Below are positions 14,279 through 41,689 of a stretch of DNA of 64,000 bases, piece after piece. The notes beneath the pieces were generated by a model, which did not search any database, was not told the origin of the DNA, and saw only the letters and a program-made list of their open reading frames with translations. The first letter of the stretch is position 1, and each line of letters starts with the position of its first letter. The stretch covers positions 186,001-250,000 of IMG/VR virus record IMGVR_UViG_3300032770_000001; one strand, written 5' to 3'. The translations under genes and the position numbers were made by a program.

Positions 14279-14309
14279 CTACCCTTTTGAGAGCTTAGAC
14301 TGGTAGAAT
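14279..14309 (+). promoter_or_regulatory. phage promoter, CTAnC-N18-GGTAGAAT class (leaderless)
   Basis: CTACC...TGGTAGAAT; ATG at 14316, 6 nt after the -10 box, no RBS. Confidence 0.75.
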
Positions 14310-14315
14310 GTAGGT

Positions 14316-14792
14316 ATGAAATGTTCACGGACACACTACAGCCGGATGATCGACTACTCAGCCGTCGCGGGTGGTCGGATAAAGCTGAACCAAGCCATCT
14401 ATCAGTATGTCCTCGGCATCAACGGTCGCCGCAGCACCGGGCGCACCCGCAGCCAGATCATGAAGTGGTTCCACGGTACGCCTGAATCTTTCGTGGTCGC
14501 CTCCCTGAATGAAGTTTCCGGTGACCGCATCCTGTTCGATACCACTACGCGCAAGTTCCGCGTGCGGACGTTCGGTGACGTGAAGCGAGAGCGGGAAATG
14601 GAGGCCCTCAGTGCCGCCCCGCCTCCGACGCCGCTCTTCCTGAACCATTGGATTGGGCAAGCCGAGGACGCCATCCTGCAAGGGCAGACCAAGGCGCAAT
14701 TCCTCGCCGCCTGCCATATCGAGAATCGCATCATCGCTGGAATTGCCTATAATCAAGCCAAAATCGCTGCTAATCGCCGGGGGTCACTATGA
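14316..14792 (+). CDS. hypothetical protein
   Basis: First gene after the strand switch; directly behind the promoter. Confidence 0.65.
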   Translation: MKCSRTHYSRMIDYSAVAGGRIKLNQAIYQYVLGINGRRSTGRTRSQIMKWFHGTPESFVVASLNEVSGDRILFDTTTRKFRVRTFGDVKREREMEALSAAPPPTPLFLNHWIGQAEDAILQGQTKAQFLAACHIENRIIAGIAYNQAKIAANRRGSL

Positions 14793-15163
14793 TGAATCTG
14801 GACAAGGTCCGGGTACAATTTCAGTCTAAGAACCCGCACGACACGATATTTATCAAGGTGTGGGCTGATGTTAACAACGAGCCGAAGGAACTGTACAAGG
14901 CTCTGGAGAAGGTCGGTTTTGAACAGGAGAAAACCTTCCCCCTGCCGCCCATCGCCGCCTCGTGCTATTATGACGCTGGCTACGCCAAGGGCGATCAGAC
15001 GCAGATCATCACCCGGTACTTCTGCAAGGACGGTACAGGGTTGTTCGGCGGCTGGACGAAAGAAGAGAAGAGGGTCAACCGTGCCGCCGCACGCAAGGTT
15101 CTCAGCAAGTTCGGTTTTATCAGCGTCACGCATCGCAAGCTGACCATTGCCGATATGATGTAG
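14789..15163 (+). CDS. hypothetical protein
   Basis: ATGA overlap in the + strand gene chain. Confidence 0.65.
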   Translation: MMNLDKVRVQFQSKNPHDTIFIKVWADVNNEPKELYKALEKVGFEQEKTFPLPPIAASCYYDAGYAKGDQTQIITRYFCKDGTGLFGGWTKEEKRVNRAAARKVLSKFGFISVTHRKLTIADMM

Positions 15164-15172
15164 GGGAATTCT

Positions 15173-15484
15173 GTGACCGACAACGCATTGCTCGACGTAA
15201 TCCGGGAGATTCCACAGCAGGCTCAGCGGCAATATGGCACCGACGAGCAGCTTCGGTACGCGATGGCGGCTGCCAATAAGCTTGGTCTGTACGACGCCGC
15301 CGACGTGATCCGCCGTTACGCGGGATTGGACGAGTTGGCGAATTTGGCGCAGAAGCACACCTGCACGTATCCCTGTGAGTTCTGTGCGGCTACCGATCCG
15401 AACTACAGCTTGAAGAAGCACGCAGAGCGCCCCGGCGAAGATTGGCGGGATGTCCGGGCAGCACGAGATTTCCGGAGGGACTAA
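15173..15484 (+). CDS. hypothetical protein
   Basis: AGGGG RBS before GTG; HTCTYPCEFC motif. Confidence 0.6.
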   Translation: MTDNALLDVIREIPQQAQRQYGTDEQLRYAMAAANKLGLYDAADVIRRYAGLDELANLAQKHTCTYPCEFCAATDPNYSLKKHAERPGEDWRDVRAARDFRRD

Positions 15485-16014
15485 TGGGTAGCTTCAAAGA
15501 GAGAACGATTCCGTGGCGTTTGATCCGGTGGACCGACGCCAACAATAAGGAAGTCCGCAGCCTCGTGTTTCACGTGGATGAACTGAAAGAGGTTGTCGAT
15601 CTGCCATTCCCTGAGGGAGCCGCCTGCCGGGAACCGATCTACGAATGCTCGACTCTCGCCGGGGCTCGGTTCTTTCGTCGCGACCTCACTAACATTGGTG
15701 ACTGCTTCACCGAGTTTATCAACCAAGGCAACCGGGACTGTCAGGTGGTCGCCATCGACAACAAGACATGGCGTGTCCTGTACGAATACACCATGCCTAA
15801 TGAAACGTCCGCCCTCCGCTGGTATCAGTGGGAGAACGGCGTCATGAAAACCGGGCAGATTGCCTACAGCACCCTATCGAAGAAGTGGCTCGACCTGATT
15901 GCACAGGAAGGCATAGGCATCGATGGACTGGTTGGCAACCCGCAGTCCGGCAAGTACGCCATGAAACGCAATTTCGAGAAGCACGGGTACGGAGCCTATG
16001 TTAAACACATTTGA
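15484..16014 (+). CDS. hypothetical protein
   Basis: Start re-called at TAATG overlap behind GGAGG. Confidence 0.65.
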   Translation: MGSFKERTIPWRLIRWTDANNKEVRSLVFHVDELKEVVDLPFPEGAACREPIYECSTLAGARFFRRDLTNIGDCFTEFINQGNRDCQVVAIDNKTWRVLYEYTMPNETSALRWYQWENGVMKTGQIAYSTLSKKWLDLIAQEGIGIDGLVGNPQSGKYAMKRNFEKHGYGAYVKHI

Positions 16015-17266: not shown

Positions 17267-17274
17267 ACGACAGC

Positions 17275-24408: not shown

Positions 24409-24677
24409 GTCACGTCGGTCAGTTCTTTGATAACAACCCGTTCTGGACAGTGGCGATCATCTGGCTGTTCGCTGTCGCATTCATGTGTATTCTTGCGGAC
24501 GCGAAGACAGCGAAGGTCAGGCGGATCAAGCGCATTCTGGTATCGGTCTGCATGACTTTCATGATCTGGGGTGTTTTCCTCGCCGGGTTGTACGATGCCG
24601 CCAAACTCATGCCTCCGGTTCCCGCGATCAAGTCCCCGACTATGGATTCCTCCTGCTCCTATACTGTTAAGCCGTAA
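24405..24677 (+). CDS. small membrane protein (2 TM)
   Basis: ATGA overlap; two hydrophobic stretches. Confidence 0.6.
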   Translation: MSHVGQFFDNNPFWTVAIIWLFAVAFMCILADAKTAKVRRIKRILVSVCMTFMIWGVFLAGLYDAAKLMPPVPAIKSPTMDSSCSYTVKP

Positions 24678-24689
24678 GAACTTAAACCC

Positions 24690-24720
24690 CTAACCAAAAT
24701 TGACCTTCGACTGGTAGAAT
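24690..24720 (+). promoter_or_regulatory. phage promoter, CTAnC-N18-GGTAGAAT class
   Basis: CTAACC...CTGGTAGAAT. Confidence 0.75.
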
Positions 24721-24736
24721 TAGGCAGGAGATTTTT

Positions 24737-25183
24737 ATGCCTGACAAAATTACGTACCGTGGCGTCCGCAATGTTGAGGGAGACGTGTATCGCTGCTTCG
24801 TTCACCGCGAAGACAATGTCTCATCGGTCGATTACGAACTCGATCCTCGTAACGACATCTACGACCACAGCCCAACAGGGATCGCGTGGGGCTACGGCGG
24901 CAGCGGTCCGGCTCAGCTTGCGTTGGGCATTCTCGCTGACTATTTCAGTCCGGACGGCAAGAGGGTGCGTTACACCCGCCGCAACGAGTGGGACATGGAT
25001 GGTCGCGACGACCCGAATCAGAAAGCCCTCAAGCATTATCAGGAATTTAAGTGGGCAATCGTGGCGCTATTCCCAATGGATGGCGAGTGGGAGTTGCCCG
25101 GTGAGATAATTGAGAAGTTCGTCACGGGAACGCTGACGGACGAAGAGAGACGCGAGTTTCTCAAGGGTCAAGTGAATGCCTGA
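24737..25183 (+). CDS. DUF6166-like protein
   Basis: HSPTGIAWGYGGSGPAQLALGILAD signature; AGGAG RBS. Confidence 0.7.
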   Translation: MPDKITYRGVRNVEGDVYRCFVHREDNVSSVDYELDPRNDIYDHSPTGIAWGYGGSGPAQLALGILADYFSPDGKRVRYTRRNEWDMDGRDDPNQKALKHYQEFKWAIVALFPMDGEWELPGEIIEKFVTGTLTDEERREFLKGQVNA

Positions 25184-25739
25184 GACCTTACAACTGGTGT
25201 ATTGGGACAACCCGGTTCTTTCGACCGTATGCACTCCCGTCGCCGACAGTGCTTTCGGCGCTGATAAGCTGCGAGACTTTGCCGCCCGGTTGCTGGCGAC
25301 GATGGATGCCAAGAACGGCGTCGGGCTGGCGGCTCCGCAGGTCGCGGTGACTGAGCGGATGTTTGCCATGCATTTCCCGAATAGTGAGCAGGATCGGGAG
25401 CCGTGGAAGCCGATTGTGGTCATCAATCCGACCTTGGAACTGAACGGGGGTACTGTGGCGGCACGTGAAGGCTGCTTGAGTCTGCCGGGGGTGTTTGAAC
25501 AGGTTGCACGGGCTGAGAACGTGGTCATGCGCTATCGGGATGCGGACGGTGACGAATTGGTGCGGGAATTGACCGAAATCGACGCTAGAGTAGCTCAACA
25601 CGAGTTTGACCACCTGAACGGGATCATGTTCTTTGACTATTTGAATATCCGCCCGACTTACGGTCGTCGGATGTCTAAACAGGTCTCGAAACAGGTCATG
25701 CGGATGTGGGAGAAAGAACGCTCTCGACGTGGGCTGTAA
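25176..25739 (+). CDS. def: peptide deformylase
   Basis: All three motifs: GVGLAAPQV, EGCLS, QHEFDHLNG. Confidence 0.95.
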   Translation: MPETLQLVYWDNPVLSTVCTPVADSAFGADKLRDFAARLLATMDAKNGVGLAAPQVAVTERMFAMHFPNSEQDREPWKPIVVINPTLELNGGTVAAREGCLSLPGVFEQVARAENVVMRYRDADGDELVRELTEIDARVAQHEFDHLNGIMFFDYLNIRPTYGRRMSKQVSKQVMRMWEKERSRRGL

Positions 25740-25759
25740 TCTAGGGTAAGATCGGGTTC

Positions 25760-25978
25760 ATGAACAGATCAAAGGCTATAACCGCAGCGGACAATGCGAG
25801 AGCGATTTTCCAATGTTTTGCCAATGCCGTTAATGACAACGCTCTGGTAAAACCGGGGATCGGTCATGCGATCCGGGACTACGAGGATCGGTTCAAGGTG
25901 GAGTTCAATAAATTGCTCGATGCAGTCGATCTCGATAAAGATCAGATCGGCTTCCAGCGAGTGGAGTATCCGAAATGA
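25760..25978 (+). CDS. hypothetical protein
   Basis: Follows a TCGACG-17nt-TAAGAT promoter-like site; probably leaderless. Confidence 0.6.
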   Translation: MNRSKAITAADNARAIFQCFANAVNDNALVKPGIGHAIRDYEDRFKVEFNKLLDAVDLDKDQIGFQRVEYPK

Positions 25979-26160
25979 TGAATGACCGTGGGGTAGTTAA
26001 TGAACCTTCGTTTGTTCTTTTCCCCGGCGACACTGTCAGCATTGTGGTCGATACTAAGACCTATCGTGGCACGCTGATGAACGACAATGGTCGTTGGTAC
26101 GTGAAAGTGCTCGGTGCCGACCCCGGTGAAGAGAAAGAAGTGGTCATCGTTAAGCTATGA
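25975..26160 (+). CDS. hypothetical protein
   Basis: ATGA overlap, GGAG RBS. Confidence 0.55.
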   Translation: MMNDRGVVNEPSFVLFPGDTVSIVVDTKTYRGTLMNDNGRWYVKVLGADPGEEKEVVIVKL

Positions 26161-26432
26161 GAAGTGGAAAAGTCATCCACGTCTGGATTACAAAGTACGC
26201 TTTAACTCAGGGCATTTTTGAAATCGATGCCGAAGAGTGCGTGACCTCAACTGGCGAATGTCAGAACATGATCCAGAAAGTTGGTGGAGCGTATTCCGAT
26301 TATTATCATGGCGAGGGCCGGGAGTGGCATCGTACTGAAGCCGCCGCCAAAGAACATGCGAACAAGATGGTGCGAGACAAGATCGCGAGTCTGAAAAAGA
26401 GTATCGCGAAATTTGAAAAACTGGTGTTCTGA
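26157..26432 (+). CDS. hypothetical protein
   Basis: ATGA overlap; VWITKYALTQGI start typical of small phage proteins. Confidence 0.65.
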   Translation: MRSGKVIHVWITKYALTQGIFEIDAEECVTSTGECQNMIQKVGGAYSDYYHGEGREWHRTEAAAKEHANKMVRDKIASLKKSIAKFEKLVF

Positions 26433-26620
26433 TGACACGAGGAGAGAAAGTTCAATTCGCAACTGATCTCGAACTTATGCATGAACGCCCCATGCGTCTC
26501 GGTCTTTATGCAACCGGGCAGCGTATCCACAATGCGATTCGCATGGTGGGGTTTGAAATCGCCGACGACATCACAGGTTGCATCGCATACGAGGAAGCTT
26601 TAGCGGCAGCGGAGAAGTAA
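26432..26620 (+). CDS. hypothetical protein
   Basis: TGATG and TAATG overlaps. Confidence 0.55.
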   Translation: MTRGEKVQFATDLELMHERPMRLGLYATGQRIHNAIRMVGFEIADDITGCIAYEEALAAAEK

Positions 26621-27762
26621 TGGCAAACCGAGAATACAGAGAAGAGCGTTACGACTACACCGGAGGGCGTGAGCACGCCCCGGAGTTGATCGTTGCAGTC
26701 GGCATCTCCGGCTCAGGGAAATCCACGGAGATCACGCAGATGGTGAAACGGTCACAGGGTAAGACCGTCCGCTTGAACCGTGACGACATGCGCAAGATGC
26801 TTTTCTGCGGAGCCGATTGGAACAAGCGGAACGAGGATTACGTCCGCAAGGCTCAGATGGAAGCTGCACGCATCGCGCTCCAGATGGGCAAGAACGTGGT
26901 GATCGACGACACCAACTGCATCCGGCAGACCCGGCAGAAGTGGGAAGAGTTGGCGGTCGATCTGCACACGCACCTGCGCTTCCTGATCTGGCAAGTGGAC
27001 TTAAAGGTCGCTGTAGAGCGAGATGCACTTCGCGGCGTAATCTGCGAAGCCTGTAAGCGTCCTATGGGCGCAATGGTGGGCGAAGAGATCATTCGCCGCC
27101 AAGCAAAGGATTTGGGACAGTTCAGCATGAGTCACGAAGTCAAGGCAGCGACGTTGACCCGCCCCTATTGGGAGCGGCAACAGCTTCTCAAGGGAGGCTT
27201 CATCCCCCGTCTGCCCGGACGCCCGTGGATTCTGTACGATCTGGACGGTACAGTAGCGAAGCGTGGCGACCGTGGTCGGTTCGAGGAGCACAAGGTCATC
27301 CTCGATACCTACTATGACACCGTCGTGCAATGGATTCGTGCATTGCAGCCGTTCTACAACTTGGCAGCCGTCTCCGGACGGCAGGATTTCTGCGGTGATG
27401 ACACCTGCGATTGGTTGCAGGCTGGTGACGTTCCGTTTGACCGCATCATCATGCGGTACACGCGGGATAACCGCCCTGACTATCAGGTGAAGGAAGAAAT
27501 CCTGAAAGAGTTGCAGGCTGTTGTCGGTCAGTCCGTGGGTTACTTCGACTCGAACGAAGAGTTTCGCGTTCCTGACGAGGGAATCGCGTTCGTAATCGAC
27601 GACCGTCCGCAGGTAGTCAAGATGTGGCGGTCGCACGGCTTGACGGTGTTCCCGGTTCGGGGTGTGGATAAGCATACCAAGGACTGCACGGAGCAGCACA
27701 AGGACAAGCCGTGGTACAAGGACGGCTACTGCGCTGAATGCGGAGCGGTCGAGGACTTCTGA
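26620..27762 (+). CDS. pseT: polynucleotide 5'-kinase/3'-phosphatase (T4 PseT-like Pnkp)
   Basis: P-loop GISGSGKST, RDD, DDTN; HAD domain DLDGT, SGR, K, IDDRPQV; start re-called at TAATG overlap. Confidence 0.92.
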   Translation: MANREYREERYDYTGGREHAPELIVAVGISGSGKSTEITQMVKRSQGKTVRLNRDDMRKMLFCGADWNKRNEDYVRKAQMEAARIALQMGKNVVIDDTNCIRQTRQKWEELAVDLHTHLRFLIWQVDLKVAVERDALRGVICEACKRPMGAMVGEEIIRRQAKDLGQFSMSHEVKAATLTRPYWERQQLLKGGFIPRLPGRPWILYDLDGTVAKRGDRGRFEEHKVILDTYYDTVVQWIRALQPFYNLAAVSGRQDFCGDDTCDWLQAGDVPFDRIIMRYTRDNRPDYQVKEEILKELQAVVGQSVGYFDSNEEFRVPDEGIAFVIDDRPQVVKMWRSHGLTVFPVRGVDKHTKDCTEQHKDKPWYKDGYCAECGAVEDF

Positions 27763-27926
27763 TGCTGCTCGACAGTTTTAGAGGTACGGTCGAGCAGGGC
27801 TGTCCGCTGTGTCGTTGGTTTGGCATTGTCCGGGCGTTTCCAGCACATTGGAGATCGCACAGTGTGCTGGAGCGCATGGTTTATCGCTTACGCAAGCTAC
27901 GGAGGCTTCGATGGGTCGCCAAATAA
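27762..27926 (+). CDS. small hypothetical protein
   Basis: TGATG overlap, GAGG RBS, CPLC. Confidence 0.45.
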   Translation: MLLDSFRGTVEQGCPLCRWFGIVRAFPAHWRSHSVLERMVYRLRKLRRLRWVAK

Positions 27927-28466: not shown

Positions 28467-28473
28467 GTAAACT

Positions 28474-28779: not shown

Positions 28780-29146
28780 AGCTGGCGCGACCGCTTCGCT
28801 GATTTGTGCCGTGCACTGTATCAGCCTGCCGTTACTGTTCGCGGTGATCCCGGCAATAGGGCTCACGTGGCTGGATAATGTCTGGTTTGATCGAGTGTTT
28901 CTGGCGGCAGCCGTGGTGTTTGTGATTCTTGCTCATCCACGTGGGTATATAAGACACCGTCGTTGCATTCCAGCGGTGCTGGCACTCATCGGTATTGCTA
29001 CTGTGGTGTTGGCGATCTCGCTGTGGGAACAATCGGAAGCGCACCATTATCTGGTTGCATTGGGCGGCTTAACAATCGCTTCATCGCATTGGCTTAATCG
29101 GCATTTCCTGCATCACGCTTGTTGCGAGGGACATCATGGCAGATGA
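28760..29146 (+). CDS. MerC-domain membrane protein
   Basis: DKAGATASLICAVHC..LP N-terminal signature; 4 hydrophobic segments; GY.RHRR; His/Cys tail. Confidence 0.8.
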   Translation: MDKILDKAGATASLICAVHCISLPLLFAVIPAIGLTWLDNVWFDRVFLAAAVVFVILAHPRGYIRHRRCIPAVLALIGIATVVLAISLWEQSEAHHYLVALGGLTIASSHWLNRHFLHHACCEGHHGR

Positions 29147-29438
29147 GTATTATGTGCTTTCGTTGAAATGGTCGGTCGGTTCCGACTACGTCGTGTTTTG
29201 GGGACCGAATGACGGCGGCTATTTCACCAATCTTGCCGAAGCAGGACGATATTCGCAGGAGCAGATTGACGCACATCGTAGCTACTACGACAACGGCCAT
29301 ACCACCCTCGCGGTGCCATGTAGCGAGATTGACGCATTGGCATGGCGGACTGTTTTCGCTGATCGCCTGCACGACACGATTTTGAAGAATCATGGCGTGG
29401 ACTGGATGAAGGTGCTTGAAGAGCGGAGATGCGGATGA
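29136..29438 (+). CDS. hypothetical protein
   Basis: GAGGG RBS; FWGPNDGGY...AGRY motif. Confidence 0.65.
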   Translation: MADEYYVLSLKWSVGSDYVVFWGPNDGGYFTNLAEAGRYSQEQIDAHRSYYDNGHTTLAVPCSEIDALAWRTVFADRLHDTILKNHGVDWMKVLEERRCG

Positions 29439-29698
29439 GTGAAGTTACACTAACCTGCTCCCATACGATGGGGTTGGAGCGGGGGGATTTTATCACTGTC
29501 TCCGGGTTTGCAAACATAGCCAACAACGGCTCGTTCATCGTTCGCCGTGTTCGTGGCTTTGGGTTGATCGTGCAGCCAGCTTCGTTCTGGGATTATGTCC
29601 GGCACTATGCTCGACGGGTTATGACGTGGGCAAAGTGGTATTACTATGGAATATCCGACTTTGCCAACGAGTTGAGAGACTCGTGGATGGACGAATAG
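29435..29698 (+). CDS. hypothetical protein with FCCH-like beta module
   Basis: VTLT...GLERGDFITVSG...NNGSFIV. Confidence 0.55.
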   Translation: MSEVTLTCSHTMGLERGDFITVSGFANIANNGSFIVRRVRGFGLIVQPASFWDYVRHYARRVMTWAKWYYYGISDFANELRDSWMDE

Positions 29699-29705
29699 GA
29701 AATTT

Positions 29706-29876
29706 ATGGCGCAGCCGAAACGTCGAATGATACGGCAAGAGTGGTATCTTGCTTACATGCTGTGTGTGCTTTCAGGTGCCAGCTTTTTCGACGGGCACCG
29801 GATTAGCGGTGGAATTCTGTTAGGATTTTCGGTTTTGATTGTCGTTCTCTGCGATGGATTCGGAGTTCGATTGTGA
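29706..29876 (+). CDS. small membrane protein (56 aa)
   Basis: AGGA RBS; two hydrophobic stretches; below the ORF-track cutoff. Confidence 0.55.
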   Translation: MAQPKRRMIRQEWYLAYMLCVLSGASFFDGHRISGGILLGFSVLIVVLCDGFGVRL

Positions 29877-29885
29877 AAGGATACT

Positions 29886-31055
29886 ATGCCTGTTTACTTG
29901 AGAGACATTTTGCCTGTCGATTTGCTGATGAAGCACATCGAGGATGGCGTAGTCCGCAAGCAGGTACACCCTCAGTATCCTGATCTCTTCATCCTCAATT
30001 ATTCTGAACATGCCCAGTTTGGCAAGATTTGGGACAACGTCACCAACAACTGCCGTGGGCTGATCGTACACGCACCCACCGGATTGCCGGATGCGGTCGT
30101 AGTTGCACGTCCGTTCAAGAAGTTCCACAACCTGAACACGACCTACATCCCGGAGACGATGGAAGAGAATCTCCCGAAGGATGAAGTTCCGCTTGTGACC
30201 ACGAAGCTGGATGGGTCAATGGGCGTACTATACGTGTGGGACAACCTTCTTTGGATGGCAACGCGGGGCTCGTTCGCATCAGAGCAGGCGCGTTGGGCTA
30301 CGGGATGGTTACGTGCGCACTTCGAGCGTCTCGGTCAGTATCGTCCGTATCATCCTTGGTTGCCGGATACGACTCCGGTATTTGAGGTCATTTACGAAGA
30401 GAATCGAATCGTAGTGGCTTATGATTTCGAGGGTTGTGTGCTGCTCGGAATCATCAACCATGAGGACGGACGTGAGTTCCGCCGCGACTCAGTTGAACGG
30501 TTCGGTGCCATGTACGATTTCAAGGTTGTGCCGAAGTTCGACAAGTCCCTGTCGGAGTGTGTTTCAGAGAACACCCTGAACGAGGAAGGTTACGTGTTGA
30601 CCTATAGTAACGGTACTAAAGTAAAGGTCAAGTTCCTCGATTATTGCCGCCTCCACAAGGTTCTTACTGGTATGAATCCACGGGGGATATGGGAATTACT
30701 AGCCAAAAATCAGACCGAGACGGTAGAATTGATATTGAAGGACGAGAAAATGCCGGAGCAGTTCAAGGCATGGTTCTCCGGCTGGGTTGAGCACCTTCGC
30801 ACGAAGTATCAGGATATCGAACGTCGTGCGCAGGCGGTTTTTGCAACCCGCCCCTTCACTGGTAAGTGGGCGTCGGAGCCATCGCCGGAAGGCTTGAAGT
30901 TGTGGCGTAAGACGCAGGCTTTGCACTTCCAGAAGACCCCGGACTTGTGTTCGGTTCTGTTTGCGATGCTCGACGAGAAGCCGTATGCGGAGATCATCTG
31001 GGACAGACTGAAGCCGAGAGCGGATGAAAGAACGTTCAGAAAGGACGGAGAGTAA
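29886..31055 (+). CDS. RNA ligase, T4 Rnl1 family
   Basis: CRGLI, RPFKKFHN, motif I KLDGS, ATRGSF, FEVI..ENRIV, EGYV, KVK. Confidence 0.92.
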   Translation: MPVYLRDILPVDLLMKHIEDGVVRKQVHPQYPDLFILNYSEHAQFGKIWDNVTNNCRGLIVHAPTGLPDAVVVARPFKKFHNLNTTYIPETMEENLPKDEVPLVTTKLDGSMGVLYVWDNLLWMATRGSFASEQARWATGWLRAHFERLGQYRPYHPWLPDTTPVFEVIYEENRIVVAYDFEGCVLLGIINHEDGREFRRDSVERFGAMYDFKVVPKFDKSLSECVSENTLNEEGYVLTYSNGTKVKVKFLDYCRLHKVLTGMNPRGIWELLAKNQTETVELILKDEKMPEQFKAWFSGWVEHLRTKYQDIERRAQAVFATRPFTGKWASEPSPEGLKLWRKTQALHFQKTPDLCSVLFAMLDEKPYAEIIWDRLKPRADERTFRKDGE

Positions 31056-31270
31056 TGACACTGTTGAATGCACTGTTCGGATGCACGCACGGGAATTACA
31101 GTTTCCCCCGTACACCCAAGGGGCCGAAACGACCTCAGGCAGCAGCAATCACGGGCACATACGTTGTCTGTCTCGACTGCGGCAAAGAAATGCCGTATGA
31201 CATGAACGAAATGAAAATCGTGGACGCTAAGAAGCTGGACGTTTCTTGCGTCCCCGTTCTGGAAGGATAA
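31055..31270 (+). CDS. small zinc-binding protein
   Basis: LFGCTHGNYSFP...TYVVCLDCGKE.PYD. Confidence 0.7.
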   Translation: MTLLNALFGCTHGNYSFPRTPKGPKRPQAAAITGTYVVCLDCGKEMPYDMNEMKIVDAKKLDVSCVPVLEG

Positions 31271-31273
31271 CCC

Positions 31274-31316
31274 ATGAACTTGGCAGCTACAGTCGCTATG
31301 AACTTGGCAGCTACAG
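31274..31316 (+). repeat. 24-nt-period tandem duplication at gene start
   Basis: ATGAACTTGGCAGCTACAG at 31274 and 31298. Confidence 0.9.
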
Positions 31317-32605
31317 CCGTCATGAAGGAACTGCGACGGGCGGGTCATCAGGCTTACCTCGTGGGTGGTTGTGTGCGTGACATCCTTCTCCAGCGTAAGC
31401 CAAAGGATTTCGACGTAACGACTGATGCCACACCTGAGCAGGTTCAGGCTCTTTTTGAACACACGCTGGCAGTCGGTGCCTCTTTCGGTGTGGTGATTGT
31501 TCTGGTGGATGTCGATGGCGTTGACCATCAGATTGAAGTCGCCACGTTCCGAACCGATGGTCAGTATTCTGACGGTCGGCGACCGGATTCTGTCGTCTAC
31601 AGCCTGAGTGCGGAAGAGGACGTGAAGCGTCGGGACTTCACTATTAACGGTTTGTTGTGTCTCGGCGAGGCAGACACGGGCTCCGTAGCGGAGTACGAGG
31701 CCGCTCTTACGGGTGCCACAGACCGCGTCACGGTCGGCAATCATACGTTCGGAATCGTGGATCATGTCGGCGGTATCGCTGACATCCAGCGGGGAATTAT
31801 CCGTTGCATCGGCGACCCGGATGCCCGGTTCGGCGAGGACGCCTTGCGGATGCTTCGGGCGGTTCGGTTTGCTGCTCAGCTTGGCTTCGAGATCGAGAAC
31901 GCCACGTGGAGGGCAATCGAAAAGAATGCCCTCGCGATCAAGCAGGTCAGTGCGGAACGGGTTCGTGACGAACTCTTCAAGCTGTTCGCTGCTCCATTCC
32001 CGGTCGAGGGGTTGGTGCCACTGTTCAGCACCGGGCTGGCGCAGCACGTATTTCCGGTAGAGGTTGTCCGGGAATTGCGGATGGCGTACTGCTTGCGGCG
32101 ATTCGAGCGATTCAACTCTGCGCTGCCGGAAGTCGGCTTGGCGATGTTGCTCAACGACACGAACCCACGGGCGACTGTCGAACTTTGCAACGCCCTCAAG
32201 CTGCCGAACGACGTAAAGGAAGCGGTTGTGAACGGCGTGTTCTACGTCGATACGATTGCTGCCTCTCCGAAGTTCGACATGGCAACCGTTAAGCGCACGA
32301 TGCGCAAGAGGGGGATCAAGATTGCTCTGGAGTTGTTCTTGCAGGATGAAATGGTCGGCAAGACGAACCGGGGCATGGAAGAGACCATGCGCATCTATAA
32401 CCGATTCGCCAACTTGACTCCAGAAGAGATTAAGCCTGCGCCGTTTATCACTGGCGACGATTTGATCGCGAAGGGGTTGACGCCCGGACCGGAGTTCCGA
32501 CGCATCCTCGAAGACCTTGAGACTTACCAGTTGAACGGTGGAATCAAGTCTCGTGCTGATGCTGAGGAACGATTGAAATTCGTGTGGACGGGGGAGGCTA
32601 AGTAA
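31274..32605 (+). CDS. cca: class II tRNA nucleotidyltransferase (CCA-adding enzyme)
   Basis: YLVGGCVRD, DFD, EVATFR, RRDFTING, EDALRMLRAVRF; lacks the poly(A) polymerase GRRF signature; no HD domain. Confidence 0.9.
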   Translation: MNLAATVAMNLAATAVMKELRRAGHQAYLVGGCVRDILLQRKPKDFDVTTDATPEQVQALFEHTLAVGASFGVVIVLVDVDGVDHQIEVATFRTDGQYSDGRRPDSVVYSLSAEEDVKRRDFTINGLLCLGEADTGSVAEYEAALTGATDRVTVGNHTFGIVDHVGGIADIQRGIIRCIGDPDARFGEDALRMLRAVRFAAQLGFEIENATWRAIEKNALAIKQVSAERVRDELFKLFAAPFPVEGLVPLFSTGLAQHVFPVEVVRELRMAYCLRRFERFNSALPEVGLAMLLNDTNPRATVELCNALKLPNDVKEAVVNGVFYVDTIAASPKFDMATVKRTMRKRGIKIALELFLQDEMVGKTNRGMEETMRIYNRFANLTPEEIKPAPFITGDDLIAKGLTPGPEFRRILEDLETYQLNGGIKSRADAEERLKFVWTGEAK

Positions 32606-33150
32606 TGCAGCCAGCCTCCCCATCCCGCTTTAAGAGCCTGACCATACTGGCGGATGTATCCACTCTCAAAGAAGCACAGTCAATCCGCGATCTTCTTGAA
32701 GTCGAATTTACCGATTTGAGTATCCGGCTTCTCCCGGTGCCGGGACTGATCCCTGAGATGTGGGAGAAAATTCTGATCCCTTCATTGCCAACGGATCAAC
32801 TGGTCATTGGGTTCGGGTTGTGCGGCACCGTAGCGGCACGCATTCAGGAAACACACCCGGAGTTGGGTTTGTCGGTGATGGCGATCAACTCTCCGACTAC
32901 GACCGCATTTTGGCAGGTCATCTGGAAATCGGATCAACGGGTTGCAATCTATTCCAGCAACTATGAACCGATCAAGGGCGTGAACTGGACCGGATTGGCT
33001 GAAACGGCTCTGGACGTGGACTGGCTTCAGCACGGGATGTTCTCGGAAAATGGTGGGAACCTTTGCAAATATGCCATCGCTTACTACGTCGCGGCTTACC
33101 TCATCAACCGAAATCTGGAACCAGCGGTTTCTTCATTTTCTGCTCAATAA
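32605..33150 (+). CDS. hypothetical protein (possible degenerate alpha/beta hydrolase fold)
   Basis: GGAGG RBS; LVIGFGLCG resembles a nucleophile elbow without Ser. Confidence 0.55.
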   Translation: MQPASPSRFKSLTILADVSTLKEAQSIRDLLEVEFTDLSIRLLPVPGLIPEMWEKILIPSLPTDQLVIGFGLCGTVAARIQETHPELGLSVMAINSPTTTAFWQVIWKSDQRVAIYSSNYEPIKGVNWTGLAETALDVDWLQHGMFSENGGNLCKYAIAYYVAAYLINRNLEPAVSSFSAQ

Positions 33151-36287: not shown

Positions 36288-36655
36288 AACTTATGATTTT
36301 CGACCCCGGCACAAAGCCGCTGGAAGTTGAACTCGCCGACATCAACAATGCCCTACAGTACATCAACCACGCTCAGTATGGTGATTCAGGTTGGGCTGTT
36401 CTAAACGATGACGGCACTGTGTTCAAATCCGGCATGGTTGAGAACTTCAGTCTCAGCGAATTCCTACCTAGTTTCAAACAGGAAGCCCTCTGCGAGAAGT
36501 GCAACGTCAATCTGGGTGTTCAGTACAGCGAGAACGAAGCCGATCAGGTTGACGATGATCTTGCCAACCAGCATCGTGTTTACAGCAGCAAGTGCTCGAT
36601 GACGTATGGTTCTCAGTTCATCGTCAAGGGTGCCGTTGAGGAAGTGGAAGTATAG
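36284..36655 (+). CDS. hypothetical protein
   Basis: Start re-called at ATGA overlap behind GGAG; CEKC...H...C. Confidence 0.6.
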   Translation: MKLMIFDPGTKPLEVELADINNALQYINHAQYGDSGWAVLNDDGTVFKSGMVENFSLSEFLPSFKQEALCEKCNVNLGVQYSENEADQVDDDLANQHRVYSSKCSMTYGSQFIVKGAVEEVEV

Positions 36656-36666
36656 CACGAAAGTGA

Positions 36667-36697
36667 CTAACCGAAATTCCGAATTCATAGGTAGAAT
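36667..36697 (+). promoter_or_regulatory. phage promoter, CTAnC-N18-GGTAGAAT class
   Basis: CTAACC...AGGTAGAAT. Confidence 0.7.
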
Positions 36698-36714
36698 CTC
36701 CTCAGGGGGATTTT

Positions 36715-36882
36715 ATGAACTTCAAGTCGGAACTGCCGGAATCGATCTTGACGGGTGGGTTTTTTCTCCTACTTGCGTGCCTTCCAGTTGCCGCAGTCGT
36801 TTATGCTGGGTACGCATCTAAACCGAAAGAGCGCCCGGTGACGCTGGAAGATCAGTATCCCGATGAGCACCTTGGAGTCTAA
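36715..36882 (+). CDS. small membrane protein (55 aa)
   Basis: AGGGGG RBS; MNFKSELPESILTGGFFLLLACLPVAAVVYAG...; TAATG overlap; not in the ORF track. Confidence 0.6.
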   Translation: MNFKSELPESILTGGFFLLLACLPVAAVVYAGYASKPKERPVTLEDQYPDEHLGV

Positions 36883-37737: not shown

Positions 37738-38181
37738 GTGAATCCCCTGCTCAAATCCGCCGCCAAAATAACCCCTGAATTACAGGCGTTCATGGATGAA
37801 TTTTATGCCGGGACGCAATCGAGCCCTATGCGGTCCGCCGACCGAATCTGGCGGGGTAAGGTCATGATTGAAGCACGCCCGTTCGACAAGCGAATCCACA
37901 TTTCCGACATCCTGTCGTTAGAGCGCGGTCAGAAGAATGCTTCCCAAGCGTTACAGTGGCTCTGTAGCCTCGCGGACAAGCACGGGGTGGGTATGAGCCT
38001 AGTCCCCAAAGCTCACGGCACAGGCGGTCTGGATGATGCCCAATTGAGAGCGTGGTACATCCGTTACGGTTTCCAGCCGCACATGGGCTCCAAGCTCGTC
38101 CGGGAGCCGCGCACGACCCTGAAGCTTTCCCCCGGCAAGATGAAAGTCATTCCCATCAATCCGCAAAGTGATGAAAAATAA
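37738..38181 (+). CDS. GNAT-like acetyltransferase
   Basis: IHISDI...RGQKNASQAL..L...AD, LRAWY.RYGF; start re-called at GTG 37738. Confidence 0.65.
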   Translation: MNPLLKSAAKITPELQAFMDEFYAGTQSSPMRSADRIWRGKVMIEARPFDKRIHISDILSLERGQKNASQALQWLCSLADKHGVGMSLVPKAHGTGGLDDAQLRAWYIRYGFQPHMGSKLVREPRTTLKLSPGKMKVIPINPQSDEK

Positions 38182-38201
38182 GGGAATATAGTCCCAAAAA
38201 A

Positions 38202-38232
38202 CTACCTTTTCTGAGCCTCCCGCTGGTATAAT
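38202..38232 (+). promoter_or_regulatory. phage promoter, CTAnC-N18-GGTATAAT class (leaderless)
   Basis: CTACC...CTGGTATAAT; ATG at 38239. Confidence 0.75.
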
Positions 38233-38238
38233 AGAGGC

Positions 38239-38751
38239 ATGAACAACGATCACCTGCCAGAGTCGAATTACTTGCGAGGCGAACGCGAGGCCGAACTGAA
38301 AGCTCTCGATCCCCGCAGTGCCGAACAGGACGCTTTCGGCGACCTCTTGCTGGAGCAGGCTTACATCGAGAGCAACTGGACTTTCTCAGTCGAATCGGAA
38401 CTCGCCGTCGTCGGCCACGATCCTGAGTACGCCGATATGGACAATCCTCGCGGCGAGATCGTCCGCAATCGCTACTTCATGGTCGGCACCACCCCTAACG
38501 GTCGGCAGTATCGCTTCGGTTGGGAGCGCACGCCGGAACTGGCGGAAGCTGCCTTCCGGTATCTGGCTCCTCCGGTCGAACAATGGTCTTTGTGGCGCTG
38601 CATCTACGGCTCCGACGCCTACGTGCAGGACAATTGCGAACTTCAACAGCTTCGCGATGAAATGGACGAAGATTTCCGTGGCACCGGACGCGACTGGATG
38701 GTCGAGGCTCCCGAAGTTGCTGCTCGGATGATTAACGCGGGGGTGTTGTGA
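38239..38751 (+). CDS. hypothetical protein
   Basis: Directly behind the promoter. Confidence 0.65.
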   Translation: MNNDHLPESNYLRGEREAELKALDPRSAEQDAFGDLLLEQAYIESNWTFSVESELAVVGHDPEYADMDNPRGEIVRNRYFMVGTTPNGRQYRFGWERTPELAEAAFRYLAPPVEQWSLWRCIYGSDAYVQDNCELQQLRDEMDEDFRGTGRDWMVEAPEVAARMINAGVL

Positions 38752-39469: not shown

Positions 39470-39480
39470 TGGGGGTTTTA

Positions 39481-39687: not shown

Positions 39688-39688
39688 T

Positions 39689-39964
39689 ATGGACAAACCA
39701 GTAATCCTGCTTTCATTCAACAGTTTTGGCACGGCTGGCGGACGCCGGGGTTGCTACGAGGCGCACCTGAAAGATCGCTTTGGCGTTTGGGGAGCCGGAA
39801 CCACAGCAGAGTCCGCCGTCGAAAGCTGTGCACGCACGGCGAAATCATTCGAGATCGACGACCTGCATACCGAGAACCCCGCCGACTACGTCGTCATGGT
39901 CACGGATTTGAAGTCCTTTCCATCGAACAAAGATTTCGATTTGCGGTTGGCAGAACTTATCTAA
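39689..39964 (+). CDS. hypothetical protein
   Basis: GAGGAG RBS. Confidence 0.6.
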   Translation: MDKPVILLSFNSFGTAGGRRGCYEAHLKDRFGVWGAGTTAESAVESCARTAKSFEIDDLHTENPADYVVMVTDLKSFPSNKDFDLRLAELI

Positions 39965-40002
39965 GTCGCTTGTCAACGAGTCTATTGGGGTAGGAGGGTT
40001 GT

Positions 40003-40965
40003 ATGGCGAAAATTCAATATCTCAACAAGCGGCTCAGCGAAAAGAAGCTGGCACTGATCGACCTCTGCAACGAGATCATTGCGACCTATCAGGCGCAGAA
40101 CTTGCGGCTGACGCTCCGGCAGCTTTACTACAGGCTCGTTGCTCGTGGAGTGATTCCAAACATCCAGAGCGAATACAAAAACCTTGGCGATGTCCTGAAC
40201 GATGCCCGGTTGTGCGGACTGATAGATTGGGACGCCATCGAAGATCGTACCCGCGAACTCGGACAAAACTCGCATTGGGATACGCCTTCAAACATCATCG
40301 AATCGGCTCGTGACAGCTACTTGAACGACCTGTGGAAGTTTCAGCCGATCCGCCCGGAAGTGTGGGTCGAGAAGGACGCCTTGGAGGGCGTCATCGAAGC
40401 AGCTTGCCGACCACTGGACGTGCCGTTCTTCTCCTGTCGTGGCTATACCAGCCAGACGGCGATGTGGGAAGCGGGGCAACGCATTCTCCGGCGTCGTCGC
40501 AACATCACGACCTATGAGGGAGAGCACAAGCGCAAGAATGGGAATGAATTCCGGCAGCGCACGCTGATCTTTCATCTTGGCGATCACGATCCGTCCGGTA
40601 TCGACATGACTCGTGACATCACCGACCGCCTTGAACTGTTCAATGGAGCCCCGGTGGAGATTCGCCGTCTGGCTCTGAACATGCCTCAGATCGACAAATA
40701 CAACCCGCCGCCGAACCCGGCTAAGACCACGGACTCGCGGTTCCGGTCGTATCAAGAAAAGCACGGCGACGAGAGTTGGGAGTTGGATGCGCTCGATCCC
40801 AATGTGCTCATCGCCCTGATCCAGTCCAACATCCGCAGCGTCATGGATGTGCCCCGCTTCGAGGAAGCGAAGGCGATTCAGGAGAAGGGACGCACTGAGC
40901 TAACGGCGATTGCCGAGAAGTACGACAAGGCGGTCAAAGCTGTGTTAGGTAAGAGCGGCAAATGA
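40003..40965 (+). CDS. Toprim-domain protein (Topo VI-A/Spo11/DUF2399-like)
   Basis: TLRQLYYRLV winged-helix part, EVWVEKDAL, CRGY.S, HLGDHDPSGIDM, ELDAL. Confidence 0.8.
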   Translation: MAKIQYLNKRLSEKKLALIDLCNEIIATYQAQNLRLTLRQLYYRLVARGVIPNIQSEYKNLGDVLNDARLCGLIDWDAIEDRTRELGQNSHWDTPSNIIESARDSYLNDLWKFQPIRPEVWVEKDALEGVIEAACRPLDVPFFSCRGYTSQTAMWEAGQRILRRRRNITTYEGEHKRKNGNEFRQRTLIFHLGDHDPSGIDMTRDITDRLELFNGAPVEIRRLALNMPQIDKYNPPPNPAKTTDSRFRSYQEKHGDESWELDALDPNVLIALIQSNIRSVMDVPRFEEAKAIQEKGRTELTAIAEKYDKAVKAVLGKSGK

Positions 40966-41408
40966 GCCACGGCAATCGGAATTATAGACAGTGCAAGCGA
41001 CTGTTTGCGCAACAGGGCGGTCTGTGTCATTACTGCAAGGAACCGATGACGCTAGAACGCCCGACCCGGCACAAAAAGGTTGCCGACAACATGGCGACCA
41101 TCGAGCACCTTGAGGATCGTTATGATCCCAACCGGGGGAAGTTCGCCGGACAAAAGCGACATGTGGTCGCCTGTCACAAATGCAACAACGGTCGGAACTC
41201 GGTCCGACAAGCAGACCCCACGGTTGTGTCCAGAGCCGAGCTACGTCGAAGGTCGAGATCGAGTTCTCGGTGGGTGACTTTACGATGGTATCGCTGGCTC
41301 TGGAAGTCGTTTTACCAATGGGTAGTTGACATCTGTTCTCATTCGCGGTATTTTCCGAAATATGGCAAAGCGCAAATCCCGTCCCGCCGACCTGTTGTCT
41401 GCTCCTGA
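40962..41408 (+). CDS. HNH endonuclease
   Basis: QQGGLCHYC, ATIEH, VACHKCNN. Confidence 0.8.
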   Translation: MSHGNRNYRQCKRLFAQQGGLCHYCKEPMTLERPTRHKKVADNMATIEHLEDRYDPNRGKFAGQKRHVVACHKCNNGRNSVRQADPTVVSRAELRRRSRSSSRWVTLRWYRWLWKSFYQWVVDICSHSRYFPKYGKAQIPSRRPVVCS

Positions 41409-41631
41409 ATTGATCGAAGAGGCTGAACTGTCCGGCGAGACTCCGGAAAAGTTTCTTGCTCGATTGCAGGATGATGCTTATGACCGTGAAATGCACCCCT
41501 ACGACCTGTTGCTCGAAATCCGCGAATGCCGCGAAGCCGACAGTCGCATGGTGGTGATCGATGCCAAGAAGCTGGCTGAAATGCAGGCTGGTAACGGTGA
41601 CCCCATCATTGAAGAGCCCGTAACCTATTGA
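41362..41631 (+). CDS. hypothetical protein
   Basis: Start re-called at ATG 41362; acidic. Confidence 0.55.
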   Translation: MAKRKSRPADLLSAPELIEEAELSGETPEKFLARLQDDAYDREMHPYDLLLEIRECREADSRMVVIDAKKLAEMQAGNGDPIIEEPVTY

Positions 41632-41658
41632 AAACAGGGCTCAAATAACCACAAAATC

Positions 41659-41689
41659 CTAGCTTTTTCAGACTCTCCGCTGGTAGAAT
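41659..41689 (+). promoter_or_regulatory. phage promoter, CTAnC-N18-GGTAGAAT class
   Basis: CTAGC...CTGGTAGAAT. Confidence 0.75.

What the first reader, a model, noticed from the sequence alone, without database searches (positions are those of the whole stretch)
14279..41689. Five promoters share a non-canonical CTAnC box at exactly fixed spacing from the -10
Seen: intergenic sites at 14279, 24690, 36667, 38202 and 41659 all read CTA[ACG]C-N18-GG-TA[GT]AAT, 31 nt each with no spacing variation and no TTGACA at the -35 position. Most head runs of small hypothetical genes. Established: T4 middle promoters pair a sigma70 -10 with an activator box (MotA) in place of the -35. Inference: a phage-specific promoter class read by an activator, a modified host polymerase or a phage sigma factor.
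Basis: partly seen in the sequence, partly recalled or inferred. Interest (0 to 1): 0.6.

Follow-up and report, generated by a model that had tools for sequence, protein, structure and literature searches.

The report
Megaphage early promoters with odd -35 box
A 456-kb uncultivated wetland phage uses about two dozen copies of one long promoter that keeps the bacterial -10 signal, replaces the usual -35 signal with its own CTAnC box, and often starts the RNA at the start codon; what reads the box is unknown.

Summary
A relaxed scan gives about 24 sites, all pointing at downstream genes.

The full element runs from about -65 to +1:
- four phased A/T blocks;
- cCTAnC at -38 to -33;
- a T- or A-tract at -32 to -28;
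- an extended -10 (TGG-TAnnAT);
- a pyrimidine/A pair 7 nt after the hexamer.

In 13 to 16 sites that A is the A of the ATG, which predicts leaderless mRNAs. The element sits at orthologous genes (rIIA, Ku, the sigma operon) in relatives with 50-70% protein identity. In those pairs the -10 (86% identity) and the box (70%) stand out from the spacer (42%). More distant relatives lack it.

Genes behind the sites look early: rIIA, Ku, ligases, an ECF sigma and small unknowns. The phage has no RNA polymerase, no MotA or AsiA, and only an ECF-type sigma. My best reading is host primary-sigma extended -10 promoters of the pre-replicative class, with a clade-specific upstream module in place of the -35.

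The parts
14240..14318 (+). Class-1 promoter. A/T blocks lie upstream, box CCTACC at 14278-14283, tract 14284-14288, TGG at 14301-14303, hexamer TAGAAT at 14304-14309. Predicted +1 is 14316, the A of the ATG of the 158-aa ORF 14316-14792, so the mRNA would be leaderless. The site lies in a divergent intergenic region.
24650..24739 (+). Class-1 promoter. Box CCTAAC at 24689-24694, A-tract 24695-24699, TGG-TAGAAT at 24712-24720. Predicted +1 is about 24726, giving a leader of about 11 nt that begins with GGAG. ATG at 24737 opens the DUF6166 gene. A peptide-deformylase-like gene and a PNKP-like gene follow.
30660..30752 (+). Box ACTAGC at 30698-30703, A-tract, CGG-TAGAAT at 30721-30729. It lies inside the RnlA-like RNA ligase gene 29886-31055 and is probably an internal promoter for genes 31055-33150. 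Box, tract and hexamer are kept in a relative while 4 of 8 spacer bases differ.
36630..36717 (+). Class-1 promoter. Box ACTAAC at 36666-36671, tract 36672-36676, AGG-TAGAAT at 36689-36697. Predicted +1 is the A at 36704, giving an 11-nt leader with GGGGG. ATG at 36715.
38165..38241 (+). Class-1 promoter, 20 nt after the stop codon of the upstream ORF. Box ACTACC at 38201-38206, T-tract, TGG-TATAAT at 38224-38232. Predicted +1 is 38239, the A of the ATG of the 170-aa ORF, so the mRNA would be leaderless.
41620..41709 (+). Class-1 promoter. Box CCTAGC at 41658-41663, T-tract, TGG-TAGAAT at 41681-41689. Predicted +1 is the A at 41696, giving an 11-nt leader with GGGGG. ATG at 41707.

Best explanation
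These are the main promoters of the pre-replicative (early-type) genes of a megaphage clade. I propose that the downstream half is read by the host RNA polymerase carrying its primary (sigma70/sigmaA-type) sigma. In that model sigma region 2 reads TAnnAT at -12 to -7 and region 3.0 reads TG at -15/-14. Transcription would start at the conserved A, 7 nt after the hexamer, with a pyrimidine at -1. In about half of the sites that A is the A of the ATG, which would give leaderless mRNAs. Most of the others would have leaders of 11-14 nt that open with a Shine-Dalgarno run.

An extended -10 does not need a -35 hexamer, and the -35 has been replaced by a clade-specific upstream module. The module has four A/T blocks spaced about 11 bp apart (-63, -52, -41, -30). 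These resemble UP elements or curved DNA and would suit the alpha C-terminal domains. It also has the box cCTAnC at -38 to -33, at a fixed 20 bp from the -10. Something stereospecific must read the box, but not the canonical sigma region 4 contact with TTGACA.

Shown: the motif, its copy number, orientation, position, conservation and gene context, and the absence of a recognisable phage RNA polymerase or primary-type sigma. Inferred: which sigma reads it, the start site, the early timing, and every statement about what binds the box.
For: 1. The -10 signature is that of a primary sigma. T-12, A-11, A-8 and T-7 are invariant in 24 of 24 sites. Variation falls only at hexamer positions 3 and 4, in this phage and in relatives (TAGAAT, TATAAT, TAGGAT, TAGTAT, TATCAT, TATGAT). 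TG precedes the hexamer.
2. A pyrimidine at -1 and a purine at +1, 7 nt after the hexamer, occur in 20 of 24 sites, whether or not an ATG is there. An ATG sits exactly 6 nt after the hexamer in 13 sites, and 16 of 24 sites are of leaderless type. This is the known geometry of a -10 motif next to an ORF (PMC12340547).
3. The phage has no multisubunit RNA polymerase and no sigma region 3 or region 1.2 (controls positive). Its one sigma is ECF-type.
4. The genes behind the sites are rIIA, Ku-like, a DNA-ligase-like gene, an HD hydrolase, the ECF sigma operon, an alphaCTD-like protein, DUF6166 and many small unknowns. A different motif (GTATTR) heads the clamp loader and methyltransferases.
5. No canonical -35/-10 family exists that could serve as an earlier class. 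Class 1 is the only bipartite motif found upstream of genes.
6. Phased A/T blocks appear in this phage's sites and in the relatives' sites.
7. Phylogenetic footprint over orthologous promoters: extended -10 0.86, box 0.70, A/T blocks 0.59-0.64, spacer 0.42.
8. T4 early promoters are a precedent for strong phage promoters built as UP/-35/TGn/-10 (PMC2988021).
Against: - There are no RNA data. No public RNA run holds this phage, so the start site and the timing are unverified.
- The host is unknown. The only hint is a possibly chimeric Terriglobia contig.
- An extended -10 promoter needs no -35 contact, so host polymerase alone does not explain why CTAnC and its exact spacing are conserved. A further reader is required and has not been identified.
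- The phage sigma has a region 4, which normally implies a bipartite promoter, and class 1 is the only bipartite motif found.
- Spacing this strict (22 of 24 sites) is more typical of ECF or activator-dependent promoters than of ordinary sigma70 promoters.
- rIIA and DNA-repair genes are also middle genes in T4, so 'early' is not secure.
Confidence: 0.5

Rival explanations
1. Activator-dependent (sigma-appropriation-like) middle promoters. Host primary sigma reads the -10. A phage protein, made early or injected, binds CTAnC and replaces the region 4 contact with the -35, as MotA/AsiA do in T4. A related version has a phage enzyme modify the polymerase alpha subunits.
For: - The box is conserved and strictly spaced, yet unlike TTGACA.
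- The match to the -10 is stringent, as in T4 middle promoters (PMC2988021).
- The box is significant only together with the -10: 18 of 96 relaxed boxes have TA..AT exactly 20 bp away.
- A distant relative has a canonical-looking TGGACA-N18-TATACT upstream of rIIA instead, so the box is a derived trait of this clade.
- The phage encodes an alphaCTD-like DNA-binding protein.
Against: - No MotA or AsiA homologue is found.
- The box position differs from the MotA box by about 6-8 bp.
- No separate, earlier promoter class exists to express such an activator.
- The candidate factor genes themselves sit behind class-1 sites.
Confidence: 0.22
2. The whole element is read by host core polymerase carrying the phage ECF-type sigma. 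CTAnC would be its -35 and part of CTGGTA its -10, 16-18 bp downstream.
For: - The phage encodes an ECF sigma with an intact region 4.
- Its operon is headed and followed by class-1 sites, and this arrangement is conserved in the one orthologue, at 54% identity. That fits autoregulation.
- Class 1 is the only bipartite motif in the genome.
- Spacing is strict, and a T-tract after the -35 is common in ECF promoters (own knowledge).
- Phage sigmas with their own motifs are known (PMC8948821).
Against: - ECF sigmas lack regions 1.2 and 3.0, which in primary sigmas help form the T-7 pocket (1.2) and read TG (3.0) (own knowledge of sigma structure).
- The invariant TAnnAT, with variation only at positions 3 and 4, is the primary-sigma signature.
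- The AAC core typical of an ECF -35 is present in only 7 of 24 boxes, and there is no CGT/GTC-type -10.
- The start implied by an ECF -10 at -16 to -11 would not fall on the conserved Y/A pair or on the ATG.
- If every class-1 site needs this sigma, and the sigma gene sits behind one, expression could not begin.
Confidence: 0.15
3. The core promoter is a self-sufficient extended -10, and CTAnC is an operator. A phage repressor would bind it to shut off early transcription, or a host nucleoid protein would bind it.
For: Extended -10 promoters need no -35 contact (PMC2988021). A site overlapping -35 is a classic operator position. Phages do shut off early promoters with DNA-binding proteins (own knowledge: SPO1 TF1).
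Against: Simple occlusion would tolerate shifts of 1-2 bp, yet spacing is fixed in 22 of 24 sites and in all relatives' sites. The box shows no dyad symmetry. No candidate repressor was identified.
Confidence: 0.08
4. The repeats are not promoters. They would be recombination or packaging signals, or remnants of a mobile cassette.
For: Two homology breakpoints coincide with sites: an X5 contig at 36667, and the Terriglobia contig junction where this phage has site 24690. This recalls the promoter-stem-loop cassettes of T4-type phages (own knowledge).
Against: All sites are co-oriented with genes and lie at a fixed short distance from start codons or Shine-Dalgarno runs. Conservation matches promoter elements position by position while the spacers diverge. 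Acting as recombination hot spots is compatible with being promoters.
Confidence: 0.03

Closest known systems
T4 early promoters (UP / -35 / TGn / -10; Hinton 2010, PMC2988021)
   Same: Many copies of one long, strong-looking phage promoter. A-rich UP-like blocks lie upstream, with TGn plus a near-consensus -10. They serve early genes, including many small unknown ORFs, in a phage that has no RNA polymerase of its own.
   Different: T4 early promoters keep a -35 hexamer at normal spacing. Here the -35 position holds no TTGACA-like hexamer, and a different box (cCTAnC) sits 3 bp further upstream. Here many transcripts are predicted to be leaderless.
T4 middle promoters (MotA box + sigma70 -10; sigma appropriation)
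   Same: A host-type -10, often with TGn, is combined with a phage-specific box in place of the -35. The -10 match is stringent and the spacing is narrow.
   Different: The MotA box is TGCTT-type, centred at -30 and 12 +/- 1 bp from the -10. Here the box is CTAnC, centred near -35.5 and 20 bp from the -10. No MotA or AsiA homologues are present. No earlier promoter class is visible.
Leaderless '-10 motif next to the ORF' promoters (Deinococcus-Thermus, Actinobacteria; PMC12340547; Thermus phages from own knowledge)
   Same: TAnnnT lies 6-7 nt before the start codon, so transcription and translation would begin at the same A.
   Different: Those promoters are usually -10-only or have a normal -35. 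Here a long conserved upstream module is attached, and the same promoter also serves genes with a short Shine-Dalgarno leader.
Promoters of phage-encoded sigma factors (phiEco32 gp36: tAATGTAtA; phage 7-11 gp47: GTAAtg-N16-aCTA; PMC8948821)
   Same: A phage-specific consensus occurs in many copies, the start lies 6-9 bp downstream, and the phage encodes a small sigma.
   Different: Those motifs do not resemble a sigma70 -10. Here the -10 half is a textbook extended -10. A second motif in this genome (GTATTR, then 6-8 nt, then the start codon) looks more like that kind.

Membership tests
sigma70/sigmaA-type extended -10 promoter | A -10 hexamer TAnnnT with conserved T-12, A-11 and T-7 | tested here: met
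   24 of 24 sites; variation only at hexamer positions 3 and 4; the same holds in relatives
sigma70/sigmaA-type extended -10 promoter | TG at -15/-14, one base upstream of the hexamer | tested here: met
   T in 19 of 24 sites, G in 23 of 24; TTGG or CTGG in nearly all of the relatives' sites
sigma70/sigmaA-type extended -10 promoter | Transcription start 6-8 nt after the hexamer | not testable with these tools
   The sequence fits (Y-1/R+1 in 20 of 24 sites, ATG at +1 in 13), but no RNA run holds the phage
canonical -35/-10 sigma70 promoter | TTGACA-like hexamer 17 +/- 1 bp upstream of the -10 | tested here: not met
   Positions -35 to -30 read A-n-C-W-W-W. Consensus scans are at chance level
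T4 middle promoter / sigma appropriation | MotA box (TGCTT core) centred at -30, 12 +/- 1 bp from the -10 | tested here: not met
   The box is CTAnC at -37 to -33, 20 bp from the -10. The definition comes from PMC2988021
T4 middle promoter / sigma appropriation | MotA and AsiA encoded by the phage | tested here: not met
   PF09158 and PF09010: no match at E <= 1 in the whole genome. Very divergent analogues cannot be excluded
ECF sigma promoter | A cognate ECF sigma is available | tested here: met
   A 209-aa ECF-type sigma at genome 88354-88983
ECF sigma promoter | A -35 with an AAC core and a short CGT/GTC-type -10, 16-18 bp downstream | tested here: not met
   The variable box position is A in only 7 of 24 sites. 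There is no CGT/GTC, and the conserved downstream block is TGGTAnnAT. The consensus used comes from my own knowledge of ECF promoters
T4-early-type strong phage promoter (UP/-35/TGn/-10) | A/T-rich UP-like blocks upstream of -38 | tested here: met
   A/T content is 0.75-0.92 at -43 to -39, 0.67-0.92 at -55 to -49, and raised again at -65 to -60, in this phage's sites and the relatives'
leaderless-mRNA promoter | A -10 motif 6-7 nt before the start codon of a real ORF | tested here: met
   An ATG lies exactly 6 nt after the hexamer in 13 sites, and 16 of 24 sites count at distances of 5-8 nt. The ORFs run from 47 to 880 aa and include rIIA

The most novel reading that the evidence does not exclude
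The CTAnC box, with its flanking A/T tracts, would be the docking site of an undescribed adaptor. The adaptor would re-target host primary-sigma polymerase to phage DNA without a -35 contact, as a functional analogue of MotA/AsiA unrelated in sequence. One candidate is the phage's free-standing alphaCTD-like protein (genome 338884-339546). Another is an ECF-derived sigma that has gained sigma70-like -10 specificity. On either reading, a clade of megaphages runs its early programme largely on leaderless mRNAs.
Probability: 0.2. Interest if true: 0.75.

Novelty: new variant of a known kind. Interest (0 to 1): 0.45.

Why it matters
- Almost nothing is known about how megaphages with no RNA polymerase of their own time the expression of about 550 genes.
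- This element gives a concrete, testable handle: about 24 near-identical promoters, a defined box with fixed geometry, and a short list of phage proteins that could act on it (the ECF sigma, its conserved 323-aa operon partner, and an alphaCTD-like protein).
- If a new factor reads the box, that would be a second example of redirecting a bacterial polymerase away from -35 recognition.
- The predicted leaderless starts correct several start codons. They also suggest that the phage relies on 70S-type initiation for many early genes.
- As annotation, the motif marks operon starts in a genome where most genes have no known relatives.

Tried and rejected
- Near-identity DNA search in the phage collection: no match.
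- An exact 18-mer of the -10/+1 region in IMG/VR found only a near-identical 105-kb fragment of the same phage, plus two hits at the chance level.
- Relatives of the sigma or of rIIA in IMG/VR by peptide patterns: none close.
- RNA evidence: no RNA run holds the stretch.
- Laying contigs of four wetland DNA runs gave only fragmentary, low-depth pieces. This was not a usable test of variation in the motif.
- T7-like RNA polymerase search: no match, but its control was silent, so it is uninformative.
- Rfam: no known RNA family at the sites.
- TAG recoding was tested because of the two suppressor tRNAs: no signal.
- Read-through fusion of the 323-aa protein with the sigma: rejected, because an in-frame TGA blocks it in the relative.
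- The box as a stand-alone binding site elsewhere in the genome: not enriched.
- Host assignment through a Terriglobia MAG contig is unresolved. No other contig of that MAG matches the next 20 kb of the phage, and the phage-like block is absent from 300 other genomes of the class. The join may be an assembly chimera.
- PHROG scan of ten large proteins, done to find late genes, identified only the large terminase.
- The 323-aa operon partner of the sigma belongs to a viral family with no known function.
- The phage G paper has only software-predicted promoters and is not comparable.


Full report
**Setting**

The window is bases 186001-250000 of a 455,708-bp virus record that CheckV rates complete. 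The genome has 53.7% G+C. It carries 61 tRNA genes and a permuted tmRNA. Public runs that hold it are wetland metagenomes, and none is RNA. Isolated phages are only distant relatives. I called about 530 genes with a simple coding-potential script, which is rough but adequate for defining intergenic regions.

**Check of the observation**

- The pattern CTA[ACG]C-N18-GG-TA[GT]AAT matches 6 times in the window, all on the + strand, against 0.00 expected. These are the five reported sites plus 30699.
- Genome-wide there are 16 exact matches, and none for the reversed control pattern.
- A scan allowing mismatches, and a weight matrix, give about 24 convincing sites. The matrix finds 26 hits of 12 bits or more, against 1 in a shuffled genome.
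- GGTAGAAT is the most frequent intergenic 8-mer.
- Every site points at a downstream gene on the same strand, and nearly all are intergenic.
- One apparent exception, genome 105401, sits at the 5' end of an over-extended ORF call. An in-frame GTG lies 5 nt after its hexamer.
- The true exception is window 30699. It lies inside a full-length RnlA-like RNA ligase gene.

**Anatomy** (24 sites aligned on the hexamer)

- Four A/T-rich blocks at about -65 to -60, -55 to -49, -43 to -39 and -31 to -28, which is a period of about 11 bp.
- The box c-C-T-A-n-C at -38 to -33, with C in 20, T in 23, A in 22 and C in 22 of 24 sites. Its fourth position is free.
- A T-tract or an A-tract directly after the box.
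- An unconserved spacer.
- g-C-T-G-G-TAGAAT. The hexamer's T-12, A-11, A-8 and T-7 are invariant, and only positions 3 and 4 vary.
- (A/G)TAGG(C/T), then an A exactly 7 nt after the hexamer.

The box-to-hexamer distance is 20 bp in 22 of 24 sites; one site is 1 bp shorter and one 1 bp longer.

A pyrimidine at -1 and a purine at +1 occur in 20 of 24 sites. In 13 sites the A is the first base of an ATG that opens a real ORF of 47 to 880 aa. Counting distances of 5-8 nt, 16 of 24 sites are of leaderless type. Most other sites have leaders of 11-14 nt that begin with GGAG or GGGGG. In the window, 14279 and 38202 are leaderless designs. Sites 24690, 36667 and 41659 have 11-nt leaders.

**Conservation in relatives**

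rIIA homologues give a graded series of relatives.

- Contigs whose rIIA is 68%, 51% and 52% identical (L043-L045) keep the rIIA-rIIB-Ku synteny. They carry the same element upstream of rIIA, upstream of Ku, and at further places.
- The only orthologue-level relative of the phage sigma (54% identity, L052) has the element both before and after the sigma operon, as in this phage.
- A GTDB contig holds 14 kb syntenic with window 25.2-38.7 kb at 68-77% nucleotide identity. It keeps the sites that correspond to 30699, 36667 and 38202.
- Over these orthologous pairs, identity is 0.86 in the extended -10, 0.70 in the box and 0.59-0.64 in the A/T blocks. It is only 0.42 in the spacer, 0.45 between the hexamer and +1, and 0.43 far upstream.
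- Two more distant relatives (rIIA 34-37% identical, L046 and L047) lack the element. One has a canonical-looking TGGACA-N18-TATACT before rIIA.

The element is therefore under selection, and it is a derived trait of one clade.

**What the promoters serve**

Genes directly behind class-1 sites include the following:
- rIIA (phrog_612, 1e-89);
- a Ku-like protein;
- an ATP-dependent DNA-ligase-like protein;
- an HD hydrolase;
- DUF6166, followed by genes syntenic to peptide deformylase and PNKP genes;
- the ECF sigma operon;
- a protein with an alphaCTD-like domain;
- many small proteins with no family.

One site precedes a cluster of 16 tRNA genes. None of the genes I could annotate behind class-1 sites is a virion gene. 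A second, different motif (GTATTR, then 6-8 nt, then a start codon; about 24 sites) heads a clamp loader, methyltransferases, a metallophosphoesterase and a primase-like gene. It also lies upstream of the gene just before the large terminase. This division of labour suggests that class 1 is the earlier class. That is an inference from gene content, not a measurement.

**What could read it**

- The phage has no multisubunit RNA polymerase. The search for a T7-type enzyme found nothing, but its control was silent.
- It has one sigma: 209 aa, regions 2 and 4 only, ECF-type by Pfam, NCBIfam and PDB comparison.
- Sigma regions 3 and 1.2 are absent from the whole genome, while the control genomes respond.
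- MotA and AsiA are absent.
- Canonical TTGACA-N17-TATAAT pairs are not a family here. Class 1 is the only bipartite motif upstream of genes.

The invariant T-12/A-11/T-7, the free positions 3 and 4, the TG at -15/-14 and the Y/R pair 7 nt downstream together make up the recognition pattern of a primary-type sigma. Established structural knowledge assigns these contacts to the A-11 and T-7 pockets of regions 2 and 1.2, and the TG contact to region 3.0. An ECF sigma lacks regions 1.2 and 3.0. I therefore assign the downstream half to the host's primary sigma.

**The box**

It does not resemble TTGACA in any register. Read as a -35 hexamer it would leave a 19-20 bp spacer. It is significant only together with the -10: 18 of 96 relaxed boxes have TA..AT exactly 20 bp away, against an expectation below 1. 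Its conservation and fixed distance call for a stereospecific reader. The candidates are listed here.
- A non-canonical contact by sigma region 4.
- A host factor.
- A phage protein made early or injected.
- The region 4 of the phage ECF sigma, within the rival model in which that sigma reads the whole promoter.

The phased A/T blocks fit UP-element or curved-DNA contacts of the alpha C-terminal domains, as in T4 early promoters (PMC2988021). I cannot decide between these candidates with sequence alone.

**Comparison with known systems**

It shares the logic of a host -10 plus a phage box, but not the geometry or the proteins.
- The closest architecture is the T4 early promoter (UP/-35/TGn/-10) with the -35 exchanged.
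- The leaderless design matches the '-10 motif adjacent to the ORF' pattern described for Deinococcus-Thermus.
- Promoters of phage sigmas, such as phiEco32 gp36 or 7-11 gp47, look unlike a sigma70 -10. If anything in this genome resembles them, it is the GTATTR motif.

**Host**

The nearest bacterial homologues of the phage sigma are ECF sigmas of Terriglobales, Verrucomicrobiota and Planctomycetota MAGs, at 38% identity or less.

A contig of a Terriglobia MAG joins about 170 kb of housekeeping genes to the 14-kb phage-like block. Those genes include enolase, pyruvate kinase, phosphoglycerate mutase and ribosomal protein S21. The next 20 kb of the phage has no match in that MAG, and the block is absent from 300 other genomes of the class. 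The join may therefore be a chimera. On the bacterial side, the S21 gene is preceded by TTGACT-N17-TAGAAG. If this lineage is the host, its own -35 is canonical and the CTAnC box is phage-specific.

**Verdict**

It is a real, conserved, clade-specific promoter class. Its -10 half is ordinary (extended -10, host primary sigma), while its upstream half is new in detail and its reader is unknown. About half of its transcripts are predicted to be leaderless. I rate it a new variant of a known kind, of moderate interest.

Noticed in passing
Box, A-tract and hexamer are kept in a relative while half of the spacer differs. It is probably an internal promoter for genes 31055-33150.
   Followed up: partly
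window GTATTR at 21327, 49628, 56512, 61077, 63133 (+) and 3468 (-); about 24 sites genome-wide: A second promoter-like class: GTATTA/G followed after 6-8 nt by the start codon (ATG or GTG), with no conserved -35. It heads a clamp loader, methyltransferases, a metallophosphoesterase and a primase-like gene. It resembles single-element promoters of phage sigmas, so it is a candidate target of the phage ECF sigma or a middle/late class.
   Followed up: partly
genome 87379-88983 (locus L009:418-2022): An operon of a 323-aa protein from a viral family of unknown function plus a 209-aa ECF-type sigma, headed and followed by class-1 promoters. The same arrangement occurs in the only orthologue (54% identity, L052). 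The transcript that starts after the sigma gene begins with a conserved AAAGGGACAC stretch and runs toward a cluster of 16 tRNA genes.
   Followed up: partly
genome 338884-339546 (L034:16884-17546; protein P0121): A 220-aa phage protein whose first 70 residues align with the C-terminal domain of the RNA polymerase alpha subunit (PF03118, 30.9 bits). It keeps the equivalents of R265, N268, G296 and K298, the residues that bind UP elements. Its C-terminal half matches only an unknown PHROG. It could compete for, or bind, the A/T tracts of these promoters.
   Followed up: partly
genome 17291-26302, 30867-31271 and other tRNA clusters: 61 tRNA genes, including two with anticodon CUA (amber suppressors) and one with a four-base anticodon, plus a permuted tmRNA (RF04321, 78.8 bits). 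There is no sign of TAG recoding: TAG ends 87 called genes, and reading it through gains no more ORF length than reading TAA through.
   Followed up: partly
genome 270927, 289048, 290026: Three tRNA genes have a TAnnnT hexamer 6-7 nt before the first base of the mature tRNA. Their transcripts may therefore start at the mature 5' end, the same geometry as the leaderless mRNAs.
   Followed up: no
G001:C40 (loci L063-L073), contig of a MAG titled Terriglobia bacterium SRVP_15: A 185-kb contig. Its first 170 kb or so are bacterial housekeeping genes at 59-60% G+C. Its last 14 kb (55.6% G+C) are syntenic with window 25.2-38.7 kb at 68-77% identity and carry three class-1 promoters. This is either a hint that the host is an acidobacterium (or that a relative integrates), or an assembly chimera. 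The block is absent from 300 other genomes of the class.
   Followed up: partly
window 36667; window about 24690 compared with G001:C40 about 171000: Homology breakpoints fall at promoters. A wetland contig (run X5) diverges from the window exactly at the start of the box at 36667. The Terriglobia contig becomes phage-like just upstream of the DUF6166 gene, where this phage has site 24690. The repeated promoters may act as recombination joints for gene cassettes.
   Followed up: no
window 25176-31055: A cluster of RNA-repair and translation-related genes lies behind site 24690: a peptide-deformylase-like gene, a PNKP-like polynucleotide kinase/phosphatase and an RnlA-like RNA ligase. The first two were assigned by synteny with genes on the relative's contig that hit PF01327 and PF25109.
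   Followed up: partly
window 6742-12081 (-), 3473-6298 (-); genome-wide: Most very large proteins (1779 aa and 941 aa here, up to 3659 aa elsewhere) have no Pfam or PHROG match. Only the large terminase (genome 383452-385557) was recognised among ten tested.
   Followed up: no
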